64,000 nt of DNA from Mytilus californianus (Eukaryota). The translations under genes were made by a program, and so were the position numbers. The notes under the pieces were generated by a model. That model was not told the DNA's origin. It saw nothing but the letters and a program-made list of their open reading frames with translations, and made no database searches. The stretch spans positions 88,722,001-88,786,000 of the forward strand of contig NW_026262745.1 of assembly GCF_021869535.1 (NCBI RefSeq), in the 5' to 3' direction. Shown in pieces: positions 9,720-59,047 of this stretch. Numbering within the stretch: the stretch's first letter is position 1; the number at the start of each line of letters is the position of its first letter.

Positions 9720-10195
9720 AATGGAACCTAATGGTATATATGTAAATCTGGGTTTTGAAACAAATGCTTGCCTTGCTGTTTCTATGTCCCCTAATAGCTG
9801 AAAATGTACTACACGGATGTTGTATGATAAAGCTTTCTCGTAGGCATTAGCTATAAAATTGTCTTCCTGTATAGTTAATTGTAAATCTTGCAGAAAATAC
9901 CGACATTGAATGATATTATTGTAATGATACTGGCAAATAAAACAAAGAAAATGTGCATATACAATATTATGTATGGCATCGTTTTACTTGGATTTGTTAT
10001 TCATCGGGTAGTAATGTACACTTTTTCTACAACCATATGTTATCTATCAACAGCAATTTCGACAACTGACCATTCGTCATCTGCCTAAACAAATTCTAAC
10101 TGAATATTTCAAAAAATGAATCTGCTACAAAGTCATACCATGGTAAAGAGTATATTGCAATATGGCAAGAGCTATTTTGTTTTGTATTGTAAGTT
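9720..10195 (-). pseudogene. Decayed paralog of the C-terminal (TPR-like) region of the neighbouring cGLR
   Basis: Minus strand 9965-9762 reads IVYAHFLCFICQYHYNNIIQCRYFLQDLQLTIQEDNFIANAYEKALSYNIRVVHFQLLGDIETARQAF versus cGLR VVYAHSLRFLCHYQLNNICQCQHSLKDLQLTIEEDYFIAEDSEKASSYNILGIIFHLVGDRASARQVL. Upstream fragments IALAILQYTL and NLFRQMTNGQLSKLLL also align, with stops and frameshifts. Confidence 0.88.
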
Positions 10196-10818: not shown

Positions 10819-11495
10819 CAACACCAGTCTACGTGAAATTGGACCGATTAGACTGTTTGTAATAAGGAGAAGTTCTACATTGTACATCATAAATTCGAAG
10901 CAAGACAGTTATGTCGAAGTTTGTTAAAGTTTGGCTTAATATATCTGTATGTCTTGGTGTGCTTTTACTTTTTTTCGGCTACGATTTTGCTGTCGTTAAT
11001 GCACTAAAAGTCAAAAGATAAGTGTAATCTAAATTTACAAACCTGATTATCTACCATAACGGGATGATGTTACCCTCAGGGACAAAATGTACACCATCAG
11101 TGGCATTGACTAACATCTATCAATGATACCACTTCTATGTAAATTATAAAGTTATACTCGCAACACCAGTCTACATGAAATTGGACTGATTAGACTGTTT
11201 GTAATAAGGAAAAGTTCTACATTGTACATCATAAATTCGAAGCAAGACAGTTATGTCGAAGTTTGTTAAAGTTTGGCTTAATATATCTGTATGTCTTGGT
11301 GTTCTTTTACTTTTTTTCGGCTACGATTTTGCTGTCGTTAATGCACTGAAAGTCAAAAGATAAGTGTAATCTAAATTTACAAACCTGATTATCTACCATA
11401 ACGGGATGATGTTACCCTCAGGGACAAAAAGTACACCATCAATGGCATTGACTAAAATCTATCAATGATACCACTTCTATTTAAATTATAAAGTT
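10819..11495. repeat. Two-copy 342-bp tandem duplication
   Basis: Units start caacaccagtctac at 10819 and 11161; only scattered substitutions between copies. Confidence 0.95.
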
Positions 11496-12102
11496 GGATT
11501 GCATTAATGATGTTTTACAAATAGACAGTGCTAAAAGAGTACTAGTACACTAAATGGTTGTCGATAATTGCTGTGAAAGATAAGATAAGTCGGAGATAGA
11601 TAAAAATGTCTAAACAGGAAAGTCGACCGATAGACCAACGACGGCAAAACACCAACTTATTTGTATTTGCTTAAAAGGACGCCATTATACCAGTTTTCGG
11701 TTTGCTATTAGAAATATAGTTGATAGTTCGATCTTGATAAAAAAGAATGACACGGGAGAAGTCAATGTTTTCAGCAATTCGTGTTGCTGGGTCTTTAGTG
11801 GTTTCGGTCGTGTTACAAGAACATTAATTGTCTTTGTGTTCGTGTTTTATCGTGTAGTTTTGACTCCTGAAAAAATATTGTTTTTGCCTGTCCCTCTTGT
11901 ATCATATGAATTTTTGAAATAAGGTGTGAATTTTTTTCTTATATCATATCTGAATTGTGTGTTTTTTATTTGGGGTTAATATATTACATTAGTTTGCAAA
12001 TACCTATATCAACACGATAAATAAATCAAAACAAAAACACACAAATCAGATTTAATTTCGCAAAATACACCTCACTCACTAAAATACATTATCATACATA
12101 AT

Positions 12103-14045
12103 TCAACCTATTAATGGCAGCATCCGGTACGCACTATTACAATCTACATCTTGGTATATTTCTATAGATTTCATTAATACTTGTCTGGCTGATGCTCTGT
12201 CTCCAACTAAGTGAAAAATTATACCTAAGATGTTATATGAAGAAGCTTTCTCAGAGTCCTCAGCAATGAAATAATCTTCCTCTATAGTTAATTGTAAGTC
12301 TTTAAGAGAATGCTGACATTGACAGATATTATTAAGTTGATAGTGACAAAGAAAACGAAGGGAATGAGCATAAACTACTGGTGGTATTTGAAAGCCTGTC
12401 GTATTTTTTCCAATAAGGAGTTCATTCGGTGTGAACAATGAGTTTTCAATAAACAACACTTCATTTACTAGCAGCAATTTTGTTAATTGAACTATACTCA
12501 TCTGCATAAACAAATTCAAACGGTATATTTCATTATGAATATTTGAAACATCAAAGTCATTGTAAATTTTTTCGGGTGAACATTTTAGTAATGAGTACTG
12601 CAGGATGTCTAGAGCTATTTGAAACTGTTTAGTCTTATAGAAAAATGAAGCTAACATCAGCCATCCAGATACAGCATCTTCACGTGTATTTAGTAATACA
12701 TGACTTATACACATTTTGTACTGTTTATAGAAAGATTTGTTATTGTCCATTACATCAAACGGTAGTACCTGGCATCTATTATGACACATTTTTGACATAT
12801 AGAACGAACAAAGGTATTTTATATTTGAACTCTTAAAAGACTGCATCATGTGAACCTCTTTTTCGAATGAAGAAGGAGTGCTTGGAATGAAACCATCTCT
12901 CAAAAAAGCAGTTGGAGATACTACTATTTTCAGACTATTATAACATGTATAATATAACGTTGGCGTTTCTGATTGAATTTGAAATGATAATTTATTGATT
13001 TGATTTGAAAATAAGATACATTTCCATCCATAACTATTTAGAGACTTCAGCTTTTTCAAAAGTGTTTCTTGTGCGTGTCCTTTCATTTTATTCTCAAATA
13101 AATTATTCTCAGGAATGAAGTAATGTGGACAATCTGAGTTTTCAACACAATATGTAAGTCTCTTCATACACTTTATAAAATTAGATATTAGGTTAGCTGG
13201 GTGCCAGGTTGTGAGTGGTACTTCCTCAGAAATCCAAAACAAAATTGTTTTCATGAAATATGTGCATAGCATGTCCTTACTTTCTAAGTCATTCTCTATT
13301 ACGTCTTTGAGAAGAATTTTCATCAGAGCATAACACAGTAATTGTGTATGTGTAAAGGCATAGATCAGTAGTCTTTCTCCAACGGAAAATGATATTCGCC
13401 ATTCTAGATCTTCTTTTGAAGATCCCTTAACACCTATTGGTACAAATAGAACACCATGTGTTATAATAGACTGTTTAACATCGTATCCCGGCCATGCATT
13501 ATTTGAGCGTTTTATCCACTGATGTGCTTGTCTTATCCATGATTTACAATGTAAGCAGTAGGCAATATCAAAGACACCTTTCTTGTCGGATGTACACGGT
13601 CCATGAATTATTGGAGCAAATTCGTTGATGAATCGTTGCTTTATACGAAAGTTTGAACAGTAGTATTCACCTCCAATCTCTTCACAAATTTCCAAAATGT
13701 TTAACTTTTTATTACAGTGTTTATTTTGCAGATGTAATTGAGTGTATCCCGGTTGTATTTCGTCTGCTTCAATGATAAAATATGCTTTATCAGGGTTTAA
13801 AGGAACATTATTGTCCTCGCAAACTTCAATATATTTCATTGCAAACATAAGATCGAGATCACTTCCTCGCATCTCGAGTCCTTCTCCAAAACTTCCACTT
13901 GTGATTATTGATTGGTTGTCATCGCTTTCTAGATAATCCCTTACAGTGTTCATCATTCTTCTTGCTTTAACATTTTCCTCTGACCCGACAATTTCCTGAC
14001 AGAGGTACTGATATAGAGCTATTGATGCGTCTTGTGTTGCTGGTT
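12103..14045 (-). CDS. cGAS-like receptor (cGLR; Mab-21/CD-NTase family) with TPR-like C-terminal extension, about 647 aa, one long coding exon
   Basis: 617-aa ORF 13956-12103 with SGSFGEGLEMRGSDLDLM (GS motif plus catalytic DxD), third acidic residue in VFDIAYCL, and Mab-21 motifs FVPIG, EWRISFS, TYFMKTILFW, CPHYFIPENNLF. The frame stays open 5' to a splice acceptor (ttttttacag, AG at 14047-14046), adding PATQDASIALYQYLCQEIVGSEENVKARR. The upstream exon was not located. Confidence 0.92.
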
Positions 14046-14594
14046 CTGTAAAAAAAGTTAATTAAAAGACATAGAATACGCTTCTTACACTTTAATGTCT
14101 GTTACCTCAATGCACAACAAATGGTTTATGCGGAAGTTACATTAGTATATACTAAGCTTCTTTAAATTTGATTCTGTTTTTTTTAACACAATCGAAAAAG
14201 GAAAAATAACAACAGGGAAAGATAAATTATCCATTTTGGATGACATTTTTGTGTAGAGTTACCTTTCAAAACGGACATACCTATATGTTAGAAAGGAAAC
14301 TATTGCTGTTTAATTTGATTTATATAAAATAATATAAAAACTAGAAGATATTGTATGATTGCCAATGATACAACTATCCACCATAGTTCAAATGTAGTGA
14401 ATCATGCAATGATAGGCAAATTTATGGTCTTCAACAACTGAGAAAAAAACAATATCGCATCGAATGCTATAAAATGCCCCGACGTAAAGAATATGGATAG
14501 AATTGGATAAATGTTTACGTGGATTTGCCAATTACCTAGTTTGATCTCTTACGCTATGGTTACAAATCAGTTGATATTTGATTGAGACAACAAC

Positions 14595-14850
14595 GTTTAC
14601 CCACTATGACTTTGATTCTTTCCATTTTGAATTGTTTCTATTGTTTCTATTGTATATTTGTTAATTTATTTGTATTTTGGTTGGCCGATTAAGAATGATA
14701 TAAATGACACCTCAATGAAATGATATGTCCTACTGAAATATGACTCCACAGATTATTTACTGTGTTAGTTATATGCGAATATTTTTGGTTTTAAATTTTT
14801 CATTGTTTTTAAATCAAAGATCTAGGTTTCAGCATCACTTGGAGGGAATA
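14595..14850. repeat. Direct repeat, copy A, upstream of cGLR (copy B at about 16460-16710)
   Basis: Diverged ~250-bp copies sharing an identical 47-bp core at 14704-14750 and 16557-16603. Confidence 0.85.
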
Positions 14851-17559
14851 CATGTTTGATAAATGCACACGTGATACGAACATTTAATAATGGGAATGTG
14901 TATAGCTAGTAGTCTTAGTTAATATAATATATCAATTTGATTACGTTTTTTAATTTACATGAAATCAAACAAGAGATTTTGATTTGAACAATCTAGTTGA
15001 TCTGTAACGGGATAATGTATTTATAATTGATCCTTCACATAGAAGTAAAATAACAAACATTTCAAACTTCATTGCGAGTCTCTTATAAATTGAAAAAGCA
15101 AAGCTCAAACACATCAAACGAATGGCCAACAGCTATCATACTCATGACTTGGTACATGCATTTCCTAATTATGTAGAAAATGATGGATAATACATGGTTT
15201 TATAACCATCTAATCATCTCACTTGTATAACAAATTATCTTACCTTGGTCTCAAGTGCGAAACCAAAACGTACAATAGAGGCATCCAAGATAAGTATTTA
15301 CTTGTAAATTTTGTTATTATTACATGCAATATTACCATGATGCTGGTTCATACAAACATTTCTCAGATACTTTTTTTATTTTATTTTCAAGTATCATTTA
15401 AAATATAGGATCCATGGTACAGAAACACATTGCAAGACCAGAAAGAGTGCGAGTTATACATCTGAACGTTGTTGTAGCTAGAATTCAGGTTATCGTTCGT
15501 GTTAAAGTTTGATTCGGAGTTTCACTTCGTGATGAATCTTTAGTAGGAACGAGAATAAGACTTTTAATCTTAATGAACCCTGCGCTCGAGCTACCTAATT
15601 GAATTTTGAATGAAAATAGTTTATCACTATATTATCAAAGGAAAACATCGTGTACATGAAGGTAGAAATGTTTATTTCACATCGTGTCGCTGTATCCAGA
15701 CACACAAATTGTAACTATTAGTAATTCTGATATAACCTGGTAAACAACTTATGTAACATATGATCATTAATTATTTGTTTACAGATTGTGGCCTTTTCAA
15801 GATAGTGATGAAACAAGTTTCAGTCAGTATTCTGAATTATAAGTCAATCATATTGTTAATCAAAAGGACTGAAAAGCAGAAGGACAACATATGTTTTTTC
15901 CTCAGTGCGTTCGTTTATTTGTGTTAATTACTCTGAAATAGTGACATCAGATATGACCGAGCTCATCGACTCTTTTGACCTATAAGGTACAAAACTGAAT
16001 TTTTCGAGTCTGAGACGAAAGTCACAAAAGTGAAACATTGCGACCCTATACTAAATCGTCTTCTCTTTCAATATTTAGCTGCAGTGTTATATCAAAACAA
16101 GCTATTACTATATGAAAACCAGTTGTTGAACGTGTATCAAGATATTGCACGGAAACAACATAAAATGGCAAAATTGTGCAATTAGAAAAAGATCATATGA
16201 TAACAGGAATTGCTTACACAATGCCATAATTTTCGTAACAAAAGTATACTTAACTTATGTCCGTAGTAAAACTCAGAATTCAGTTTTAGATATACATCCC
16301 AGAAAACAAAAAAAGTATAAAATAGTACTAACCTTCCATTTTACTTTTGTGTACACTTTTATGTGCATGGATACGTTTACGTGGAGTTTCTAACAACCTT
16401 GTTGTTTTTTTTACTAAGTTATAGTTAAAATTTGTTGATATTTAATTAAAACAAAACGATTGACCCACTATGACTTGTTTCTTTCAATTTCAAAATAGTT
16501 CCTATTGTATATTTATTAATTTCATTGTATTTTGGTTGACCGATTAAGAATTATAGATGACACCTCAATGAAATGATATGTCCTACTGAAATATGACTCC
16601 ACATATTTCGTTTCGTGTAAGATAGTAGGCAAACAATATTGGTTTTAAGTGTTTTATTGTTTCTAAATCAAATATAAAGGTTTTAAAAGTATCACTTGAC
16701 GGGAAATAAAGTTTTAAACCAGACAAATATCAACCTATCTGCTCTTTGGTTGATGAACAGAATAACGTTTTTGTTCATTTCAACATTTCTTATGAGATAG
16801 CATTACAACTACACTGAGGATACGACAAACTAGACATACGTCAATCAAAGACATTAACTACGGAAATAAATCTACACCGGACGGCAACCAGTTAAAGTGT
16901 CAAAATCAAGCTTGGACTGCCTATCCAGTTCGTTCAATTGATAAAAGAATATCATATAAGAAATATGAAATAATTTAAACACATAATTAAGAGAAAAATA
17001 GTGTTATTCAATATTATTTACCTGCCATTTTGTTGTACACTTACTGTTGACTTGGTTACATACGGGGATTACCCCGGAACATCTACTTTCGTTTTTTTTA
17101 AAGGTATTGTGAAATCGATTTTTAAATCAGATGTATCGTACCATGACTGTGTTTAATTCAAATTTTGTTATTATGTGTATTTATGTCTGTTATACAGAAC
17201 TGATATATTTGAATAAAGTGACCAACTATTATTATTAATATAATCTACCTTCTGATATAGGTTTTTTGTTTGTTTCACGACTTATTGAAGGGATTTTTGG
17301 CTAATGATGTCCTTCAGTGATAAGATTTTCCCATTCACCCTGTGTAACCGAACACTTATTCTTATAAGTGTTATCTCCCTGCGTCCCGTTTTTCTTGTTA
17401 TTTTTATATCTCTTTAAATGGAAAAGATATCAACAAACATTAATTTCAAAATTGTTCGTCTACTCTTAAGAATGTTTTGGTTAAGTTTAACAGATATGAT
17501 CCATTAATACCTTATGTTATTTCCCTTTAAAAAATTATCATAGATGATATTTTGAATTA

Positions 17560-28596: not shown

Positions 28597-29112
28597 GTTT
28601 AATGGTTGATTTTTTACTTACAACCACCGATAATGGAAGAAAAGTTCATTCCAGTTCAACACTTGATATATTAGGTTAATCTGAGCATTTGGACAAATAT
28701 GGCATCGAGGGTTCAAAAATCATTTCTTTAAAATTTAAAGTGAAAGCTAGCAGAGATGCAAATGTATATTTATCCAGCTCTGTCACTATAGATAGCGCAA
28801 TGCCATTATACGATGTAAACTTTGGTGCACATGATAATACCAAAACACTGGTGATACGGCGCAAAGATAACTTATTAACCACACCATTCACAATGTCTTG
28901 GAATACTGTAATTGATCGTCATTGTCTAAATAGTTCGGAATTCAGAGATTTCTGGGTTATTTGGGATAGAGGAATTGTCAAACATGGACGAGGAACTGTG
29001 ATTGGTGATGATCTGATTGGTGAATGGACAGATCCAAACCCGTTTCCGGTTAAAAGTATTTGCGTTTTAAACAGCTATAATTCTAAAGGCGACTGGATAA
29101 TACACGCTACAG
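28597..29112 (+). pseudogene. FAMeT-PAN paralog 1, exon encoding a farnesoic-acid-O-methyltransferase-like (Methyltransf_FA-type) domain; in-frame TAA
   Basis: 516-nt exon (ag|...|gtaatc). Motifs FKVKASRDANVYLS, YDVNFGAHDNTKT, EFRDFWVIWDRGIVKHGRG, EWTDPNPFPVKSI. TAA at 28677-28679 where paralog 2 has CAT. Confidence 0.8.
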
Positions 29113-29651
29113 GTAATCATGCATGCAAAGTGACTAAAAAAAACCAGAAAATTATATGACAAAATTATCTGCTGATATAATTTGTACTTAATCTAGCAAT
29201 ATGAACTAACCTACGAGAGTTCTTATGTCTAATTATATGCGTAACTATCTAAAATTCCAACTGTTTCTTTATTCTCATACAATGTTATCATAGATACATA
29301 TGAACATATACACTCCATGAAAAAAACACACATTTCTGGCCTTAGAATGTATGCAGTATGACTGAATGTTTTAAGACAATTTTTACTTTATTCTCATGTT
29401 TTGATCGCATATCACACTGACTGTGTGTGCAATAAATAAGCAAATAATACTGATTGTTTACAGTTTATTTAATTGTGTATTTTAAAAAGTGGGTTTTTTT
29501 TTGTTATTTTATGGATATGTGTTAAAAAAGGACTCTTTATTCCGACATATAATCGAATGACACAATTATGCAAGTCGTTGCTGTAATATGGTTGTTGCAT
29601 ATTGAATTATGGTAGAAAAAGATTTAAAATCAAATCATATTTCTTTTGCAG

Positions 29652-29811
29652 TTTATGGAAATGCATCTAACCATTTCATCAATTACAGTCCACCGAACGT
29701 GAAAGTTGACCTTAACATATATAAACCAGTGATGATTTTTTCTGTATCGGAGTGTGCAATAGAATGTAAGACAGATGAACAATGTATGGGGTTCAACTTC
29801 AAAGATAACAA
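29652..29811 (+). pseudogene. FAMeT-PAN paralog 1, PAN/apple exon 1
   Basis: 160-nt exon between ttcttttgcag and gtatgt; SECAIECKTDEQCMGFNF is a PAN/apple CxxxC...CxGFNF pattern. Confidence 0.8.
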
Positions 29812-29943
29812 GTATGTTGATTTTATTTTAAAGAAATGCAGAAAAAAAAAGGAAAGGGTGCACGATAACACATTTCAGAATCAACATACACATCACAAAG
29901 GCGTTTTATTGGAATCTGAAAATTATCATAAACTTGAAATTAA

Positions 29944-30402
29944 CATGGGGAGTGGGATCTGCTTATCCTTTCGGAGCACATGAGATCACCCCTGAGTTTT
30001 TGTTTGTGTTACTCAGTCTTTAGTTTTTTATGTACTGTTTTCACTATTATGTGTATGTTGGTCATTTTCTTTTTAGCCATTGCGTTGTCTTTGTATTTTC
30101 TACTATGAGTTTGAGTTAACTTTTTGATTCTGTCGCCTCTTTTGATGATAGTTATCAGCCATAAAATCTTAAATTTACTTGAATAAAACAATTTGTGGTA
30201 GAAGAGGGGCGAAAGATACCAGAGGGACATTCAAACTCAGAAATCGAAACTAAACTGACAACGCCATGGTAACAAAGAAAAAACAAACAGACAAACAGTA
30301 GTACATAAACAAAACATAGAAAAATAAAGCAACCCGAACCCCACCATAAACTTGTGGTGATTTCATGTGCTCCGAAAGGGTAAGCAGATCCTGCTTCACA
30401 TG
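29944..30402. repeat. Inverted pair of a ~200-bp dispersed repeat inside an intron
   Basis: 29944-30140 (ggatctgcttatcctttcggagcacatgagatcacc...) and 30203-30402 (reverse complement), about 60-bp spacer. Decayed relatives at about 19925-20000, 34075-34220 and 36010-36130. Confidence 0.85.
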
Positions 30403-40398: not shown

Positions 40399-40914
40399 GT
40401 CTGGTAGTAGAATTTACATTTTCTTCCACCGATGATGGACAACAAATGACATCTGGCTCAACACCTGATATATTGGATCATGCTGTGTATTTAGATAAAT
40501 ATGGCATCGAGGGTTCAACAATCACTTCTTTCACATTTCAAGTTAAAGCTAGCAGGGATGAAACTATATATTTATCAAGCTCAACCACTATGGATAGCAT
40601 AATGCCGTTCTACGATTTTAATTTTGGTGCACATACTAATACAAAAACACAGCTGGTGCGGCGCAAAGATAATTTATTAACCACACCATTTTCAACGTCT
40701 TGGAATGCTGTAATCGATCGTCATCGTCTGAAAGGTTGAGAATTCAGATATTTCTGGGTGAGTTGGGATGGTGGAGTTATCAAAAATGGACGAGGATCGG
40801 TTATTGGTGATGATATTATTGGTGAATGGACAGATCCAAACCCGTTTTTGGTGAAAAGTATTGGCGTTTTAAACAGTTATAATTCTAACGGCGACTGGAT
40901 AATTCAATCTACTG
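40399..40914 (+). pseudogene. FAMeT-PAN paralog 2, FAMeT-like exon with one in-frame TGA
   Basis: 516-nt exon; ORFs 40446-40739 and 40758-41153 share a frame and are separated by TGA at 40737-40739, where paralog 1 has TCG (Ser). Confidence 0.8.
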
Positions 40915-41362
40915 GTAATTATGCATTTAAAGTACAAAATGAAATAGATATTTATATTTCAATACAGAATTGTCTGTCCATGATGATCAAAGTCAAATTT
41001 ATTTTTAACTTATTTTCAAAATATAAACTTAAAGAGCTCGTCTATCTAATCCTATACGTAACCATTCCTAATTCCATCCGTATCTGCTTACATATATGCG
41101 ACTTTATCTCATTACAGTTGCATGGTGATATTTTCATTATATTTCGTTCTTAATATGTATGCCATCGTTTAGCAAACAATGATTTATTAATTTTCATTCA
41201 TTTTTAGAAGTTTTGATTAGATTTTTCGGACTATTTTTATGGAAATGTTGAAAACTATATGTATGGGGCCAAGTTCAATATTTTACTTAAACAACACATT
41301 AAGCTTGTTTCTCTTTGAATTTTGAACAACATTTCAACTTAGTATTTCTATTTCTTTTGCAG

Positions 41363-56283: not shown

Positions 56284-58279
56284 CTGAAAAATAGCAAAAC
56301 ATGCAGATATTTATCGGTATTCCTATTTCTTCTCGTACTACAATTATATAAGTTCATGGTATATAATGAAAACGCATTCAATCTTTCACGCTAAAAACCG
56401 CTACCTAAAATATTTTCAAAAAAATATTTCCAGTTTACTGCATGTGCGGTAATCATGTTTTATATGTATTTTGCTTGTGTGTGACCTTATCGTGTCGCAT
56501 ACAGCGTGTTCGTTTATTAGCGACTGTGTCCTTGTTCATCATATAATGCGCTTCTGTGGAGCGTGTTTCTGTGATTTTTAAAACAGTGTGCAACGAGTGA
56601 GTTAACTTTATTCAGTATTTGTTTACACTGTACCCCATGTGATGTGTTCTTGTACACACTTGGTGTACCGTGTACAAAGTGTGCATTAGCTACATGGTGA
56701 TTTTAAGTGTATTTTTAATGTAGCATGCACAACTTGTCAGTGTACAGATGAGTCGTGTTCTTATTTATACCTTTGTATGTGAACGAGAAACGAGAAACAC
56801 TTATGAACTACATCAACAAACGACAACCACTTAACATCAGATGCCTGACTTAGGACAGGTGCAAACAAATGCATCGGGTTTAAACGTTTTAATGGGCGCC
56901 AACCTTCACCCTACCTTGAACCAATAGTATAACATCATAACATAGAATGACACACTATAAAATATCAATTAAAATGGCTTAACGCAATCAAAAGACATAT
57001 TAACAAAAACAAGTGAACATACGCTGAACGAATCAATTTGATATATGACACAATGTTAATAAAAAATTAATAAAAAAGGGGTGAGATGTAAAACAATATC
57101 AGAAAGACAACCATAACCTTGGATAAAATGCCGCCAAATAAAATAACGTGCACAGGTAAGTAAAAATAATTTAGTTGTAAGGTATACATGGGGTACGGAA
57201 ATATTTTTTACAAAATAAATAATTTTGTTGTTCATAGTACGAGAACAGAAGTGAAAATTAATAGTCATACCAAACACTTATCAAATGTGGTGTATATTAA
57301 AAATAGTGAGACGAGATATAACAATAGAGAAGTAAGCATTAAATAACAAAAATGTATTACAAATTGTATCAACAGGTCAAATTAAAAGTATCGACAGGCT
57401 GTAGGATAGTTAGGAGTTAACCTTTTAATAAATATGTATAATGAAAAAATATGTTTACACCGTAAAATTGAGGTAATCTTGTGATCACACACATTTAACT
57501 TCAAACTTAAAAAAAAAAAAAATAGATAGTAAATAAACTTCACTTAATTATTAAATTCTTGTTTTCAAAATTCTGAATAAAGTTATCTTACTGTTATTTC
57601 ACTAATTGTCTTTAAAATGATAATGTGATTACTCATTTTCTTTAAGATAATTACAAATTACATTCAAAATTATAGAATAATAAATGTTTTGTACAATGTT
57701 TTAATTCGTGTTTTTTTTTTTTTTTTTTCTGTTTTACACAGTATCATGCGTGTATCGTTATGCTTCTGGTATTAGTTTTTTGGATTTACATTACTTTCCG
57801 TAAGTCTGTGTCCTAATGATTAAAATACCGATCATGTGTCCACCCTTCACTTTTTTAATGATTCAAACCTTGCAAAATGTATTTGACTAATTCACTTATA
57901 ACTACTAGAACAGAAACTAGAACGGAGTGTTGTCAGATCCTTCTAAGCAAAGAGTAGACCAATGATCGGTATGAGCGTGGTTGGTATCATGCATACGTGT
58001 AAATACCTGGTCGTGTAATTGCCTTAATTATCACTTGATGCTATTGTACGTGTGCCTTACTTGTTACCTCTAGTTCATCTGCGTGTAACATGGAATGCAT
58101 GTGAATACAACGGTAGATGCGTTACGACGAGATACGAATTTCAAATATATAATATTAACCAAAACATTTTAACTTATACATGTTATAACAAAAGTAATTT
58201 ATTGGTAAATTAATAATCACCTGAATAGGTGAAAACACACTATTGGCATTATAACACTTGTCTAGAGTTAATAACTTAC

Positions 58280-59047
58280 TGGAACGATATGTCTCCAAAT
58301 AGATTGAATATTTCTCGCTCTGATACATTCTTTTTGTTATATGTCATAGTCGGCATGACTGGTGGCTGCTTTTCTCCTTCAACATCTAACTCGGATTGAA
58401 TATTTATCAATTGTGTCATAAGTTTAGTAGCATCGGCAACTTTCTGGCTTTCGGTAAAGGCAGACTGACATTTCACGAACTTTCCTAAATCATTTTGAAA
58501 CCCAGTTCTAATTGATTGAAAGACCTTCAGGTTTGCTGTCTCTTTTTCTTCTAATGATGTAATTAGGGCTTGTACTTTCTTGTCAATCCACTGCTTCATC
58601 TGTTTCCCATCTTCTTTAATAACACGAATGGCTCCTTTTATGTCGCTTTGGTACTTTCCTGTGCCTTGTTCAATTTTATCTAGATTTGTTTTGATGGATT
58701 TAATCTTCGAGTCAATGACCTTTTTCACTTCAGTCTGTAATTCCTGTGTTGATTCGTTGATTTCAGACATATAATGTTTTTTTATGTTTTTTGACGCTGC
58801 AAATTTTGCATATTGGCATGTCACAATCAATGCAGTAAAATATGAAGTTTTCGTCGCGTTCTTTGCAAAAAAGTTTTTCTTCCGGATTGATATTTGACCC
58901 ACTAAGAAATGTATGATTTCTACATATTTTTTACCTTAAATGTAAAGTTTTACAATTTTCACACATCCATTGATCGCATTGCTCACAATAGTTACGCCCT
59001 GGTCCACTCATACAGATGTCGCATGACGTCGAAGCGGATTGTGCCAT
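58280..59047 (-). pseudogene. TRIM-like B-box1/B-box2/coiled-coil gene (no RING), disrupted
   Basis: ATG at 59047: MAQSASTSCDICMSGPGRNYCEQCDQWMCENCKTLHLR*KICRNH (TAA 58933-58931), then LFCKERDENFIFYCIDCDMPICKICSVKKHKK, a +1 frameshift in an A7 run (58783-58777) into the coiled-coil frame of ORF 58276-58902; exon ends at CA|gtaagt. Confidence 0.85.

What the first reader, a model, noticed from the sequence alone, without database searches (positions are those of the whole stretch)
12103..14045. Catalytically intact cGAS-like receptor fused to a ~280-aa helical TPR-like tail
Seen: GS and DxD motif (SGSFGEGLEMRGSDLD), third acidic residue (FDIAY) and the Mab-21 lobe are all present. The segment WRISFSVGERLLIYAFTHTQLLCYALMK lacks the H-x5-CC-x6-C zinc-ribbon insertion of vertebrate cGAS. 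The C-terminus has TPR-like patterns (GWLMLASFFYKTKQFQIALDILQYSL; SSYNILGIIFHLVGDRASARQVLMKSIEI). Established: cGLRs are nucleic-acid-activated enzymes making cyclic dinucleotides for STING and are strongly expanded in bivalves. Inference: the tail may be a ligand-sensing or autoinhibitory module, so activator and product may differ from characterised cGLRs. The ORF track misses about 30 N-terminal residues behind a splice acceptor at 14046-14047.
Basis: partly seen in the sequence, partly recalled or inferred. Interest (0 to 1): 0.7.

Follow-up and report, generated by a model that had tools for sequence, protein, structure and literature searches.

The report
Mussel cGAS-like enzyme with TPR tail
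This is an intact, probably expressed California mussel gene for a cGAS-like immune enzyme joined to a helical-repeat (TPR-like) tail; it is one of several hundred similar mussel genes, the design is already catalogued, and what the tail does is untested.

Summary
Window 12103-14045 (minus strand) is the main coding exon of Mytilus californianus LOC127715997 (649 aa, 100% match). A 7-nt coding start (ATGGCAG|gt) lies at 17028-17022, across a 2,976-nt intron.

Residues 9-354 model as a complete cGAS catalytic domain (Z 26.9, rmsd 2.6-3.0 A over about 295 residues). The GS motif (S52-G53-S54), D65-x-D67 and D162 are invariant in 64 paralogs. The cGAS-like W-R-x-S-F-S-x-x-E nucleotide-pocket motif is kept, and the vertebrate zinc ribbon is absent.

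Residues 454-649 match solved TPR domains (Z 10-12.4). 22 of 29 paralog tails hit Pfam TPR models, but this copy is below threshold. Contigs 100% identical to the exon, in what look like transcriptome assemblies, cover the exon only.

The gene is not unusual. At least 561 relatives share the layout, and every named one is from Mytilus. cGLR-TPR fusions are listed as a domain architecture in Li et al. 2023, without biochemistry. The scan has already met this family on the same chromosome (s1-287937).

The tail's role as sensor or autoinhibitor remains inference. Verdict: a new member of a known kind, of moderate interest.

The parts
17022..17028 (-). Coding part of exon 1: ATG GCA G, followed by a GTAAAT donor at 17021-17016. 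It supplies Met-Ala and the first base of Glu3.
   Evidence: This is the only ATGGCNGGT match upstream of the gene. It reproduces the annotated N-terminus MAE of P0001. No RNA read across the junction was recovered.
14046..17021 (-). Intron of 2,976 nt (GT...AG). It contains dispersed repeats.
   Evidence: Donor and acceptor sequences are. There is no contig depth here apart from a 40-nt high-copy repeat at 14353-14394 and two small repeat pieces. A ~320-nt direct repeat pair lies at 14513-14829 and 16375-16683.
12103..14045 (-). Exon 2: the last two bases of codon 3, codons 4-649 and the stop codon (12105-12103).
   Evidence: 100% identity to LOC127715997 isoform X1. Contigs of runs X1-X3 cover 12107-14043 only and stop at the exon edge.
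12991..14028 (-). cGAS/Mab-21 nucleotidyltransferase domain, residues 9-354.
   Evidence: VIA-align gives Z 26.9, rmsd 2.6-3.0 A, ~295 residues aligned and 22% identity to mouse and human cGAS, covering the whole catalytic domain. Foldseek E 1e-10. Pfam Mab-21 and Mab-21_C.
13852..13899 (-). Active-site motif hG[GS]-x10-[DE]h[DE]h: S52-G53-S54 ... D65-L66-D67.
   Evidence: Translation. S52, G53, S64, D65 and D67 are invariant in 64 paralogs. The AlphaFold model places strand 47-52, then the loop, then strand 66-78.
13567..13569 (-). Third catalytic acid, D162.
   Evidence: Translation. Invariant in 64 paralogs. It aligns with the Asp of the V-D-L-T-L strand of Sp-cGLR1, PDB 8gjy.
13372..13401 (-). 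W218-R219-I-S221-F-S223-V-G-E226-R: the counterpart of the cGAS W-R-L-S-F-S-H-x-E-K nucleotide-pocket strand.
   Evidence: It aligns column for column with mouse cGAS WRLSFSHTEK. W218, S221, S223 and E226 are invariant and R219 is nearly invariant. The motif is present in 187 of 193 full-length relatives. The role of these residues in cGAS is from memory of the cGAS literature.
12694..12990 (-). Helical linker part of the tail, residues 355-453. It is hypervariable and has the lowest model confidence.
   Evidence: pLDDT 55-79. Column entropy is 2.7-2.9 bits at 361-405 and 2.65 bits at 421-435, against 0.6-1.0 in the C-lobe.
12106..12693 (-). TPR-like module, residues 454-649. Two canonical TPR motifs (about 461-493 and 603-635) and one TPR-like helix pair (558-592), interrupted by a variable ~65-residue insert (491-556).
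   Evidence: VIA-align wide gives Z 10-12.4, rmsd ~3 A and 113-133 residues aligned to TPR domains such as TSK, HOP TPR1, LGN, Sgt1 and KLC1. Atlas TM 0.50-0.55 to bacterial TPR proteins. Pfam TPR_2 in 22 of 29 paralog tails, best 7.2e-9. Translation of TPR1.
11965..11970 (-). AATAAA, a candidate polyadenylation signal about 133 nt after the stop codon.
   Evidence: Read directly from the sequence. Not confirmed by reads.

Best explanation
This is an intact, transcribed member of a very large, Mytilus-centred family of cGAS-like receptors (cGLR-TPR).

Shown: a complete cGAS-type nucleotidyltransferase domain whose metal-binding triad and nucleotide-pocket motif are under strong purifying selection across paralogs. 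It is followed by a ~295-residue helical tail whose last ~200 residues form TPR-like repeats. Two different predictors pack the tail in a fixed position against the enzyme domain.

Inferred: the enzyme makes a nucleotide second messenger, most likely a cyclic dinucleotide, for one of the several mussel STING receptors. The tail gates this activity. Its conserved core (451-495, 556-585) is the part that packs on the enzyme. Its hypervariable segments (361-435, 496-555) give each paralog its own ligand or partner. The family would then work as a diversified receptor repertoire maintained by birth-and-death evolution.
For: Identity: 100% match to M. californianus LOC127715997.

Fold: Z 26.9 to cGAS over the whole catalytic domain, with full-length model pLDDT 82 and pTM 0.78.

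Catalytic residues: S52, G53, D65, D67 and D162 are invariant in 64 paralogs that are only 43-61% identical overall. The cGAS W-R-x-S-F-S-x-x-E strand is conserved.

Tail: TPR-like by structure and, in paralogs, by Pfam. A profile of the tail found 1,167 cluster representatives. All ten full-length ones looked up by name were Mytilus or unnamed, and seven of those ten scored Mab-21 in front of the tail.

Fixed domain arrangement: an independent ESM model of a paralog superposes over 641 residues at TM 0.82.

Variability pattern.

Expression: contigs 100% identical to the exon, in three ~60-70 Mb assemblies, cover the exon only. Stranded RNA reads lie on the exon with the first mate on + only, as expected for a minus-strand RNA in most stranded libraries. 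The nearest known paralog is only 61% identical in protein, so these cannot come from paralogs.

Pathway context: Li et al. 2023 count 218 cGLRs and 9 STINGs in M. galloprovincialis and list TPR fusions as a cGLR architecture. One M. edulis paralog carries an N-terminal TIR domain.
Against: No enzymatic activity, product or ligand is known for any member of this family, and no Mytilus name appears in the supplementary files held for Li et al.. Human MB21D2 and MAB21L1 also keep active-site residues without a known product, so intact motifs do not prove activity.

This copy's own TPR score is below the Pfam threshold. Its tail is the least basic of 64 paralogs (pI 6.8 against a median of 9.0), so it may differ functionally from its relatives.

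The enzyme domain is acidic (pI 5.7-5.9). By the pI trend in Li et al., this argues weakly against classical nucleic-acid binding by the enzyme domain.

I had no model coordinates, so where the tail sits relative to the active site is unknown. No read spanning the exon 1-exon 2 junction was found, and the three assemblies are RNA only by inference. Helical-repeat Z-scores of 10-12 are within the range a common arrangement can give (note).
Confidence: 0.6

Rival explanations
1. Pseudo-enzyme or scaffold. The protein keeps the Mab-21 fold and motifs but makes no second messenger. It would act through protein-protein contacts of the TPR tail, for example as an adaptor or chaperone-linked regulator, as is suspected for MAB21L1 and MB21D2.
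For: MB21D2 (Z 25.8) and MAB21L1 are among the closest structures. MB21D2 is the second-best sequence match in the single-sequence PDB search. TPR domains are classically protein-binding. The enzyme domain is acidic.
Against: The whole triad, the GS motif and the W-R-x-S-F-S-x-x-E pocket strand are invariant across 64 paralogs at 43-61% identity. That is hard to explain without catalysis. The best sequence match by profile is an active enzyme, Sp-cGLR1 (E 2e-19).
Confidence: 0.2
2. A functionally redundant, dispensable copy. It would be a young product of birth-and-death turnover that is still open but on its way to loss, with no specific role of its own.
For: There are hundreds of paralogs, at least 15 of them on the same 99.9-Mb chromosome record. 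The best match in any other species is only 61% identical, so there is no close ortholog. A decayed 3' fragment of a paralog lies 2 kb downstream. An earlier scan note reports a nonsense allele in another family member. Depth in the RNA assemblies is low, at 2.6-11.
Against: The 649-codon frame is intact with all family-invariant residues present. Exon-restricted transcripts, some 100% identical, are seen in three samples. At 61% identity to its nearest paralog it is not a recent duplicate, so it has stayed open for a long time.
Confidence: 0.12
3. The tail, not the enzyme domain, is a nucleic-acid-binding module in the manner of the TPR protein IFIT. The protein would then still be a nucleic-acid sensor, built differently from cGAS.
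For: In 62 of 64 paralogs the tail is basic (median pI 9.0), while the enzyme domain is near neutral or acidic (median 6.3). It is established knowledge that IFIT proteins bind RNA 5' ends with TPR repeats.
Against: This copy's tail has pI 6.8, the lowest in the family. No IFIT structure appears among the top 50 structural matches of the tail. No binding data exist.
Confidence: 0.08

Closest known systems
cGLR-TPR fusion architecture catalogued in Li et al. [quoted passage not shown]
   Same: A cGAS-like catalytic domain with a complete active site, joined to a tetratricopeptide-repeat module. It occurs in a bivalve with extreme cGLR radiation. The paper counts 218 cGLRs in M. galloprovincialis and 119 in M. 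coruscus.
   Different: The paper only lists the architecture and gives no activity, ligand or structure for a TPR-fused cGLR. I could not confirm by accession that this Mytilus family is in their tables, because the stored tables are cut. M. californianus is not named there.
Vertebrate cGAS (for example mouse cGAS, PDB 4ley, 5xzb)
   Same: The same catalytic-domain fold over its whole length (Z 26.9, rmsd 2.6-3.0 A). It shares the GS motif, the acidic triad, the W-R-x-S-F-S-x-x-E strand and the H-Y-F-I-P-x-x-N-L-F motif.
   Different: About 22% identity. No zinc-ribbon thumb and no basic N-terminal extension. The catalytic domain is acidic, and a ~295-residue TPR-like tail is added.
Sp-cGLR1 of the coral Stylophora pistillata (PDB 8gjy). 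It is activated by dsRNA and makes 3'3'-cUA according to Li et al. 2023.
   Same: The best sequence match among solved structures (profile E 2e-19). It is an invertebrate cGLR without a zinc ribbon.
   Different: It is a single-domain enzyme of 376 residues with no tail. Only the C-lobe aligns at sequence level.
Human MB21D2 (PDB 7lt1)
   Same: Second-best sequence match in the single-sequence search (1.2e-13). Structural Z 25.8, with the alignment running on to model residue 380, into the first tail helices.
   Different: It has no known product or ligand and no TPR module.
TPR sensor or adaptor modules of other immune proteins (IFIT RNA-binding TPRs; TPR sensor domains of STAND NTPases such as PDB 6mfv)
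   Same: A helical TPR-type solenoid attached to or acting with an immune effector. A STAND-TPR structure is among the tail's matches (Z 10.3).
   Different: No sequence relationship was shown. Here the effector is a nucleotidyltransferase rather than an NTPase switch. The comparison is an analogy only.

Membership tests
cGAS-like receptors (cGLR; Mab-21 / CD-NTase superfamily) | cGAS/Mab-21 bilobed nucleotidyltransferase fold | tested here: met
   VIA-align gives Z 26.9, rmsd 2.6-3.0 A and ~295 aligned residues, with model 9-354 matching mouse cGAS 146-507. Foldseek E 1e-10. Pfam Mab-21 and Mab-21_C are above their cut-offs.
cGAS-like receptors (cGLR; Mab-21 / CD-NTase superfamily) | hG[GS] motif followed after 9-13 residues by [DE]h[DE]h | tested here: met
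   T-S-G-S, then 10 residues, then D65-L-D67-L. Invariant in 64 paralogs. It lies on the strand-loop-strand element of the model. No residue-level structural superposition was available.
cGAS-like receptors (cGLR; Mab-21 / CD-NTase superfamily) | Third catalytic acidic residue on the neighbouring strand | tested here: met
   D162 aligns with the Asp of the Sp-cGLR1 V-D-L-T-L strand and is invariant.
cGAS-like receptors (cGLR; Mab-21 / CD-NTase superfamily) | Synthesis of a nucleotide second messenger on ligand binding | not testable with these tools
   This needs recombinant protein and TLC or LC-MS.
cGAS-like receptors (cGLR; Mab-21 / CD-NTase superfamily) | A cognate STING-type receptor in the same organism | not tested
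   Li et al. 2023, Table S5, lists 9 STING genes in M. galloprovincialis and 8 in M. coruscus. M. californianus itself was not searched.
Vertebrate cGAS orthologues | H-x5-CC-x6-C zinc-ribbon thumb between the lobes | tested here: not met
   The mouse cGAS Cys-rich segment aligns to a gap in the family profile. The protein is therefore a cGLR, not a cGAS orthologue.
Tetratricopeptide repeat (TPR) proteins | Match to a TPR sequence profile above the curated threshold | tested here: inconclusive
   This copy scores TPR_12 at 18-20 bits against a cut-off of 30.1. Of 29 paralog tails, 22 match TPR_2 at E <= 0.01, with a best value of 7.2e-9. Residues 461-493 and 603-635 fit the W4-L7-G/A8-Y/F11-A20-A/S27 pattern when read by eye.
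Tetratricopeptide repeat (TPR) proteins | Right-handed solenoid of helix-turn-helix pairs | tested here: met
   Tail residues 454-649 match many solved TPR domains at Z 10-12.4 and rmsd ~3 A, with TM 0.50-0.55 to bacterial TPR clusters. Caveats: such Z values are not decisive for helical repeats, and the tail-only model has a mean pLDDT of 61, with good confidence only in the last ~100 residues.

The most novel reading that the evidence does not exclude
The hypervariable segments of the rigidly attached TPR tail (361-435 and 496-555) are ligand-recognition surfaces. The several hundred Mytilus cGLR-TPR paralogs would then form a diversified repertoire of receptors. Each would couple recognition of a different, possibly non-nucleic-acid (protein) pathogen signature to synthesis of a nucleotide second messenger. 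This would be an animal counterpart of TPR-sensor immune proteins of bacteria, using a cGAS-type output.
Probability: 0.15. Interest if true: 0.8.

Novelty: new member of a known kind. Interest (0 to 1): 0.35.

Why it matters
cGLRs are an established class of animal pattern-recognition enzymes, but the ligands of most of them are unknown. No cGLR with an appended repeat domain has been characterised in the literature I could search. Mussels carry hundreds of cGLR-TPR genes. These genes have an invariant catalytic centre, a conserved tail core and hypervariable tail segments.

If the tail proves to be the sensing or gating element, the family would show how a cGAS-type enzyme can be re-targeted to new ligands by a modular repeat domain. 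It would also help explain the unusual immune-gene radiations of bivalves.

This particular gene adds one intact, expressed example with precise coordinates and a clear set of residues to mutate. It does not by itself change what is known.

Tried and rejected
1. Folding the tail alone gave a weak model: mean pLDDT 61, with residues 1-120 under 50. Only the TPR part could be searched. The helical linker 355-453 remains without a fold assignment.

2. I looked for the family in the supplementary tables of Li et al. 2023 by accession and by 'TPR'. The stored spreadsheets are cut before the relevant rows, so inclusion of this family in their catalogue is inferred from the species counts only.

3. 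RNA evidence for the exon 1-exon 2 junction: no joint was reported in four runs. Exon 1 rests on the annotated N-terminus and the splice signals.

4. Organism of the unnamed relatives from ENA, JGI and Logan: the look-up of encoding contigs gave only a sample code. A second protein search from a divergent unnamed member (P0189) again returned only Mytilus names. I therefore call the family Mytilus-centred and cannot say whether other mytilids have it.

5. Literature searches for a characterised mollusc cGLR-TPR or Mytilus cGLR found only the Li et al. catalogue.

6. Rfam scan of 11000-17500: nothing.

7. Considered and rejected: a vertebrate-type cGAS orthologue (no zinc ribbon), a pseudogene (the frame is intact and all invariant residues are present), and a secreted or membrane protein (no hydrophobic N-terminus by eye; not formally tested).
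Full report
**What is there**

The window is AT-rich animal DNA, 27-34% G+C. The minus strand between 12103 and 13956 holds by far the longest ORF of the 64 kb: 617 aa, against 208 aa for the next. The frame stays open upstream of the first ATG as far as a polypyrimidine tract and an AG at 14047-14046.

The translation from 14043 to 12106 is 100% identical to residues 4-649 of Mytilus californianus LOC127715997 isoform X1, 649 aa. The annotated N-terminus is Met-Ala-Glu. It needs a 7-nt coding piece, ATGGCAG, followed by GT. The only such site upstream of the gene is at 17028-17020, with a GTAAAT donor.

The gene model is therefore:
- exon 1 ending at 17022
- an intron of 2,976 nt (17021-14046)
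- exon 2 from 14045 to the stop at 12105-12103

An AATAAA lies 133 nt after the stop. The "about 30 missing residues" are in the same exon, and only two and a third codons come from exon 1.

**The enzyme domain**

Pfam finds Mab-21_C (5e-17) and the Mab-21 nucleotidyltransferase domain (1.4e-7), both above their curated cut-offs. Among solved structures the best sequence matches are:
- the coral cGLR Sp-cGLR1, 8gjy (5.7e-14 with the single sequence, 2e-19 with a family profile)
- human MB21D2
- cGAS

An AlphaFold2 model built on 64 paralogs has mean pLDDT 82 and pTM 0.78. Its residues 9-354 superpose on the whole catalytic domain of mouse and human cGAS at Z 26-27, rmsd 2.6-3.0 A, about 295 aligned residues and 22% identity. 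Foldseek gives E 1e-10.

The motif T-S-G-S, ten residues, D-L-D-L (13899-13852) fits the hG[GS]x9-13[DE]h[DE]h signature of this superfamily. It sits on the strand-loop-strand element of the model (strands 47-52 and 66-78). D162 (13569-13567) aligns with the third catalytic Asp strand of Sp-cGLR1.

In the 64-paralog alignment the sequences are only 43-61% identical to the query. Even so, S52, G53, G56, E57, G58, S64, D65, D67 and D162 are invariant.

The strand W218-R-I-S-F-S-V-G-E226 aligns column by column with mouse cGAS W-R-L-S-F-S-H-T-E-K. From my knowledge of the cGAS literature, that strand carries nucleotide-contacting residues. W218, S221, S223 and E226 are invariant and R219 is nearly so.

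The Cys-rich zinc-ribbon segment of mouse cGAS falls in a 12-13-residue gap of the family profile, so there is no zinc thumb. Sp-cGLR1 aligns through the same region without an insertion, so this is not a peculiarity of the mussel protein. By sequence and fold the protein meets every testable criterion of a cGLR. Activity cannot be tested here.

**The tail**

Residues 355-649 are almost entirely helical in the model.

*TPR-like part (454-649).* In the full-length model this part has pLDDT of about 70 to 96. When folded alone, it matches a long list of solved TPR domains: TSK, HOP TPR1, LGN, Sgt1, KLC1, PP5 and a STAND-TPR sensor. These matches are at Z 10-12.4, rmsd about 3 A and 113-133 residues. 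The Atlas's own model gives TM 0.50-0.55 to bacterial TPR clusters.

The tool warns that such Z values are not decisive for helical repeats. Sequence profiles help here. This copy reaches only 18-20 bits for TPR_12 against a cut-off of 30.1. But 22 of 29 paralog tails match TPR_2 at E <= 0.01, with a best value of 7.2e-9.

Read by eye, residues 461-493 and 603-635 fit the canonical TPR pattern: W/Y at 4, L at 7, G/A at 8, aromatic at 11, A at 20, small at 27. Between them lie a variable insert (491-556) and one more helix pair (558-592). "TPR-like tail" is thus a fair description of the last ~200 residues.

*Linker (355-453).* This part is helical but poorly modelled (pLDDT 55-79) and has no fold assignment.

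**How the two parts relate**

A shape search of ESM Atlas representatives found a model of a 695-residue paralog cluster. It superposes on my AlphaFold model over 641 residues, with TM 0.82 by the query and 0.77 by the match. Two different predictors, on different paralogs, therefore place the tail in the same position relative to the enzyme.

The tail folded alone is much less confident than in the full-length context, although its alignment was also shallower (29 against 64 sequences). I take this as moderate evidence that the tail is a rigid part of the enzyme and not a flexibly tethered adaptor. I had no access to coordinates, so I cannot say which face of the enzyme it covers.

**Conservation pattern**

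| Region | Column entropy (bits) |
|---|---|
| C-lobe of the enzyme, 196-345 | 0.6-1.0 |
| Tail core, 451-495 | 0.9-1.2 |
| Tail core, 556-570 | 1.1 |
| Linker, 361-405 | 2.7-2.9 |
| Linker, 421-435 | 2.65 |
| Insert, 496-555 | 2.0-2.3 |

A conserved scaffold with two hypervariable patches is what a diversified receptor family would show. It is equally what unconstrained loops would show. Codon-level tests are needed, and I did not have the paralogs' DNA.

**Charge**

The enzyme domain is acidic here (pI 5.7-5.9) and near neutral in the family (median 6.3). The tails are basic in 62 of 64 paralogs (median 9.0), but this copy has the lowest value, 6.8.

Li et al. report that nucleic-acid-responsive cGLRs tend to have a high pI. 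By that rule of thumb the enzyme domain is not an obvious nucleic-acid binder. The basic tails of most paralogs leave room for an IFIT-like reading, but this copy fits it worst.

**The family**

The word-index search found 561 relatives at E <= 0.001. The best 120 are nearly all 600-660 aa with the same layout, and every named one is from M. californianus, M. edulis, M. galloprovincialis or M. trossulus. M. coruscus appears among the relatives named. At least 15 are on the same 99.9-Mb record as this gene.

A profile of the tail alone, searched exhaustively against 1.84 billion cluster representatives, found 1,167 proteins at E <= 0.001 and 184 at <= 1e-30. I looked up ten full-length ones by name. 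All were Mytilus or unnamed, and seven of the ten scored Mab-21 in front of the tail.

A second search from a divergent unnamed member (P0189, at most 38% identical to any named protein) again returned only Mytilus names. Oyster, scallop and zebra-mussel proteomes did not appear, so the family as defined by this tail looks Mytilus-centred. Whether other mytilids carry it cannot be told from unnamed records.

The best match outside M. californianus is only 61% identical (P0003, an unnamed ENA record), the same as the closest paralog within the species (P0005). There is therefore no close orthologue, as expected for birth-and-death evolution.

A decayed 3' fragment of a paralog lies 2 kb downstream on the same strand. 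It corresponds to residues ~489-633, is 37-59% identical, and falls in two reading frames with stops (9735-10128).

Variants exist, if the gene models are right:
- P0056 of M. edulis has an N-terminal TIR domain above the Pfam cut-offs.
- P0110 has a C2H2 finger.
- P0002 has a second nucleotidyltransferase piece.

**Expression**

Three assemblies of 57-73 Mb hold contigs that cover 12107-14043. They are labelled "RNA?" by the tool and are most simply transcriptomes. They hold nothing in the 600 nt downstream. In the intron and upstream region they hold only a 40-nt high-copy repeat and two small repeat pieces.

Several contigs are 100% identical to the window, for example 410 nt at 13233-13642 in X3. 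Others differ by 3-4% and are probably alleles. Two contigs end exactly at 14043, the exon edge.

A true stranded RNA-seq run, of which 6% was read, placed a few reads in six exon bins. All had the first mate on the plus strand, as expected for a minus-strand RNA in most stranded libraries. All were 95-99% alike.

The nearest paralog is only 61% identical in protein, so none of this can come from paralogs. I conclude that the gene is transcribed at a low level. The splice junction itself was not seen.

**What is known already**

Li et al. 2023 (doi 10.1101/2023.02.22.529553) make these points:
- They define cGLRs by the fold and active site.
- They report extreme radiations in bivalves.
- 87% of cGLRs are single-domain, and some carry tetratricopeptide or ankyrin repeats (Figures 1C and S2A).
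- M. galloprovincialis has 218 cGLRs and 9 STINGs, and M. coruscus has 119 and 8.

No Mytilus name appears in the other supplementary files held, including the list of synthesised enzymes. Five literature searches found no study of a TPR-fused cGLR.

The scan has therefore found this family before.

**Verdict**

The identification as a cGLR with a TPR-like tail is well supported. The tail's function, whether sensor, autoinhibitor or adaptor, is inference.

The gene is one ordinary, intact and expressed member of a catalogued but biochemically unexplored architecture. I class it as a new member of a known kind and score interest at 0.35. That value reflects the open, directly testable question of what the repeat tail does in a cGAS-type enzyme, not anything singular about this locus.

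Noticed in passing
window 9735-10128 (-): Decayed 3' fragment of a cGLR-TPR paralog, corresponding to residues ~489-633. It is 37-59% identical to family members, split over two reading frames and contains stops. It lies 2 kb downstream of the intact gene on the same strand.
   Followed up: partly
window 14343-14399 (inside the intron): A ~40-nt stretch (14353-14394) with summed depth in the thousands in all three assemblies: 1,700-2,600 averaged over its bin and over 10,000 at one position. Many RNA-seq reads run on into unlike sequence on both sides. It is a very abundant transcribed repeat or motif of unknown kind, with no Rfam match.
   Followed up: partly
window 14513-14829 and 16375-16683: Two copies of a ~320-nt dispersed repeat (73-89% identical) in direct orientation within the intron.
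   Followed up: no
P0056 (M. edulis, 824 aa): A family member annotated with an N-terminal TIR domain (residues 19-134, above the Pfam cut-offs) in front of the cGLR-TPR body. If the gene model is right, it joins a TIR module directly to a cGAS-like enzyme.
   Followed up: partly
P0110 (M. trossulus, 790 aa) and P0002 (M. edulis, 855 aa): Other N-terminal additions in annotated family members: a C2H2 zinc finger in P0110 and a second, partial nucleotidyltransferase palm in P0002. The gene models were not checked.
   Followed up: no
window 12106-12990 (tail of this gene) compared with alignment A1: This copy's tail has the lowest isoelectric point of 64 paralogs: 6.8, against a median of 9.0, with 62 of 64 above 8.
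   Followed up: partly
window 28689-29983 and 40758-41153 (+): ORFs with farnesoic-acid O-methyltransferase-like (Methyltransf_FA, 8e-19) and PAN domain matches. They are probably exons of one or two neighbouring genes unrelated to the cGLR.
   Followed up: no
window 58279-58902 (-): A 208-aa ORF with a weak, sub-threshold match to the TRIM coiled-coil region.
   Followed up: no
I did not examine it.
   Followed up: no
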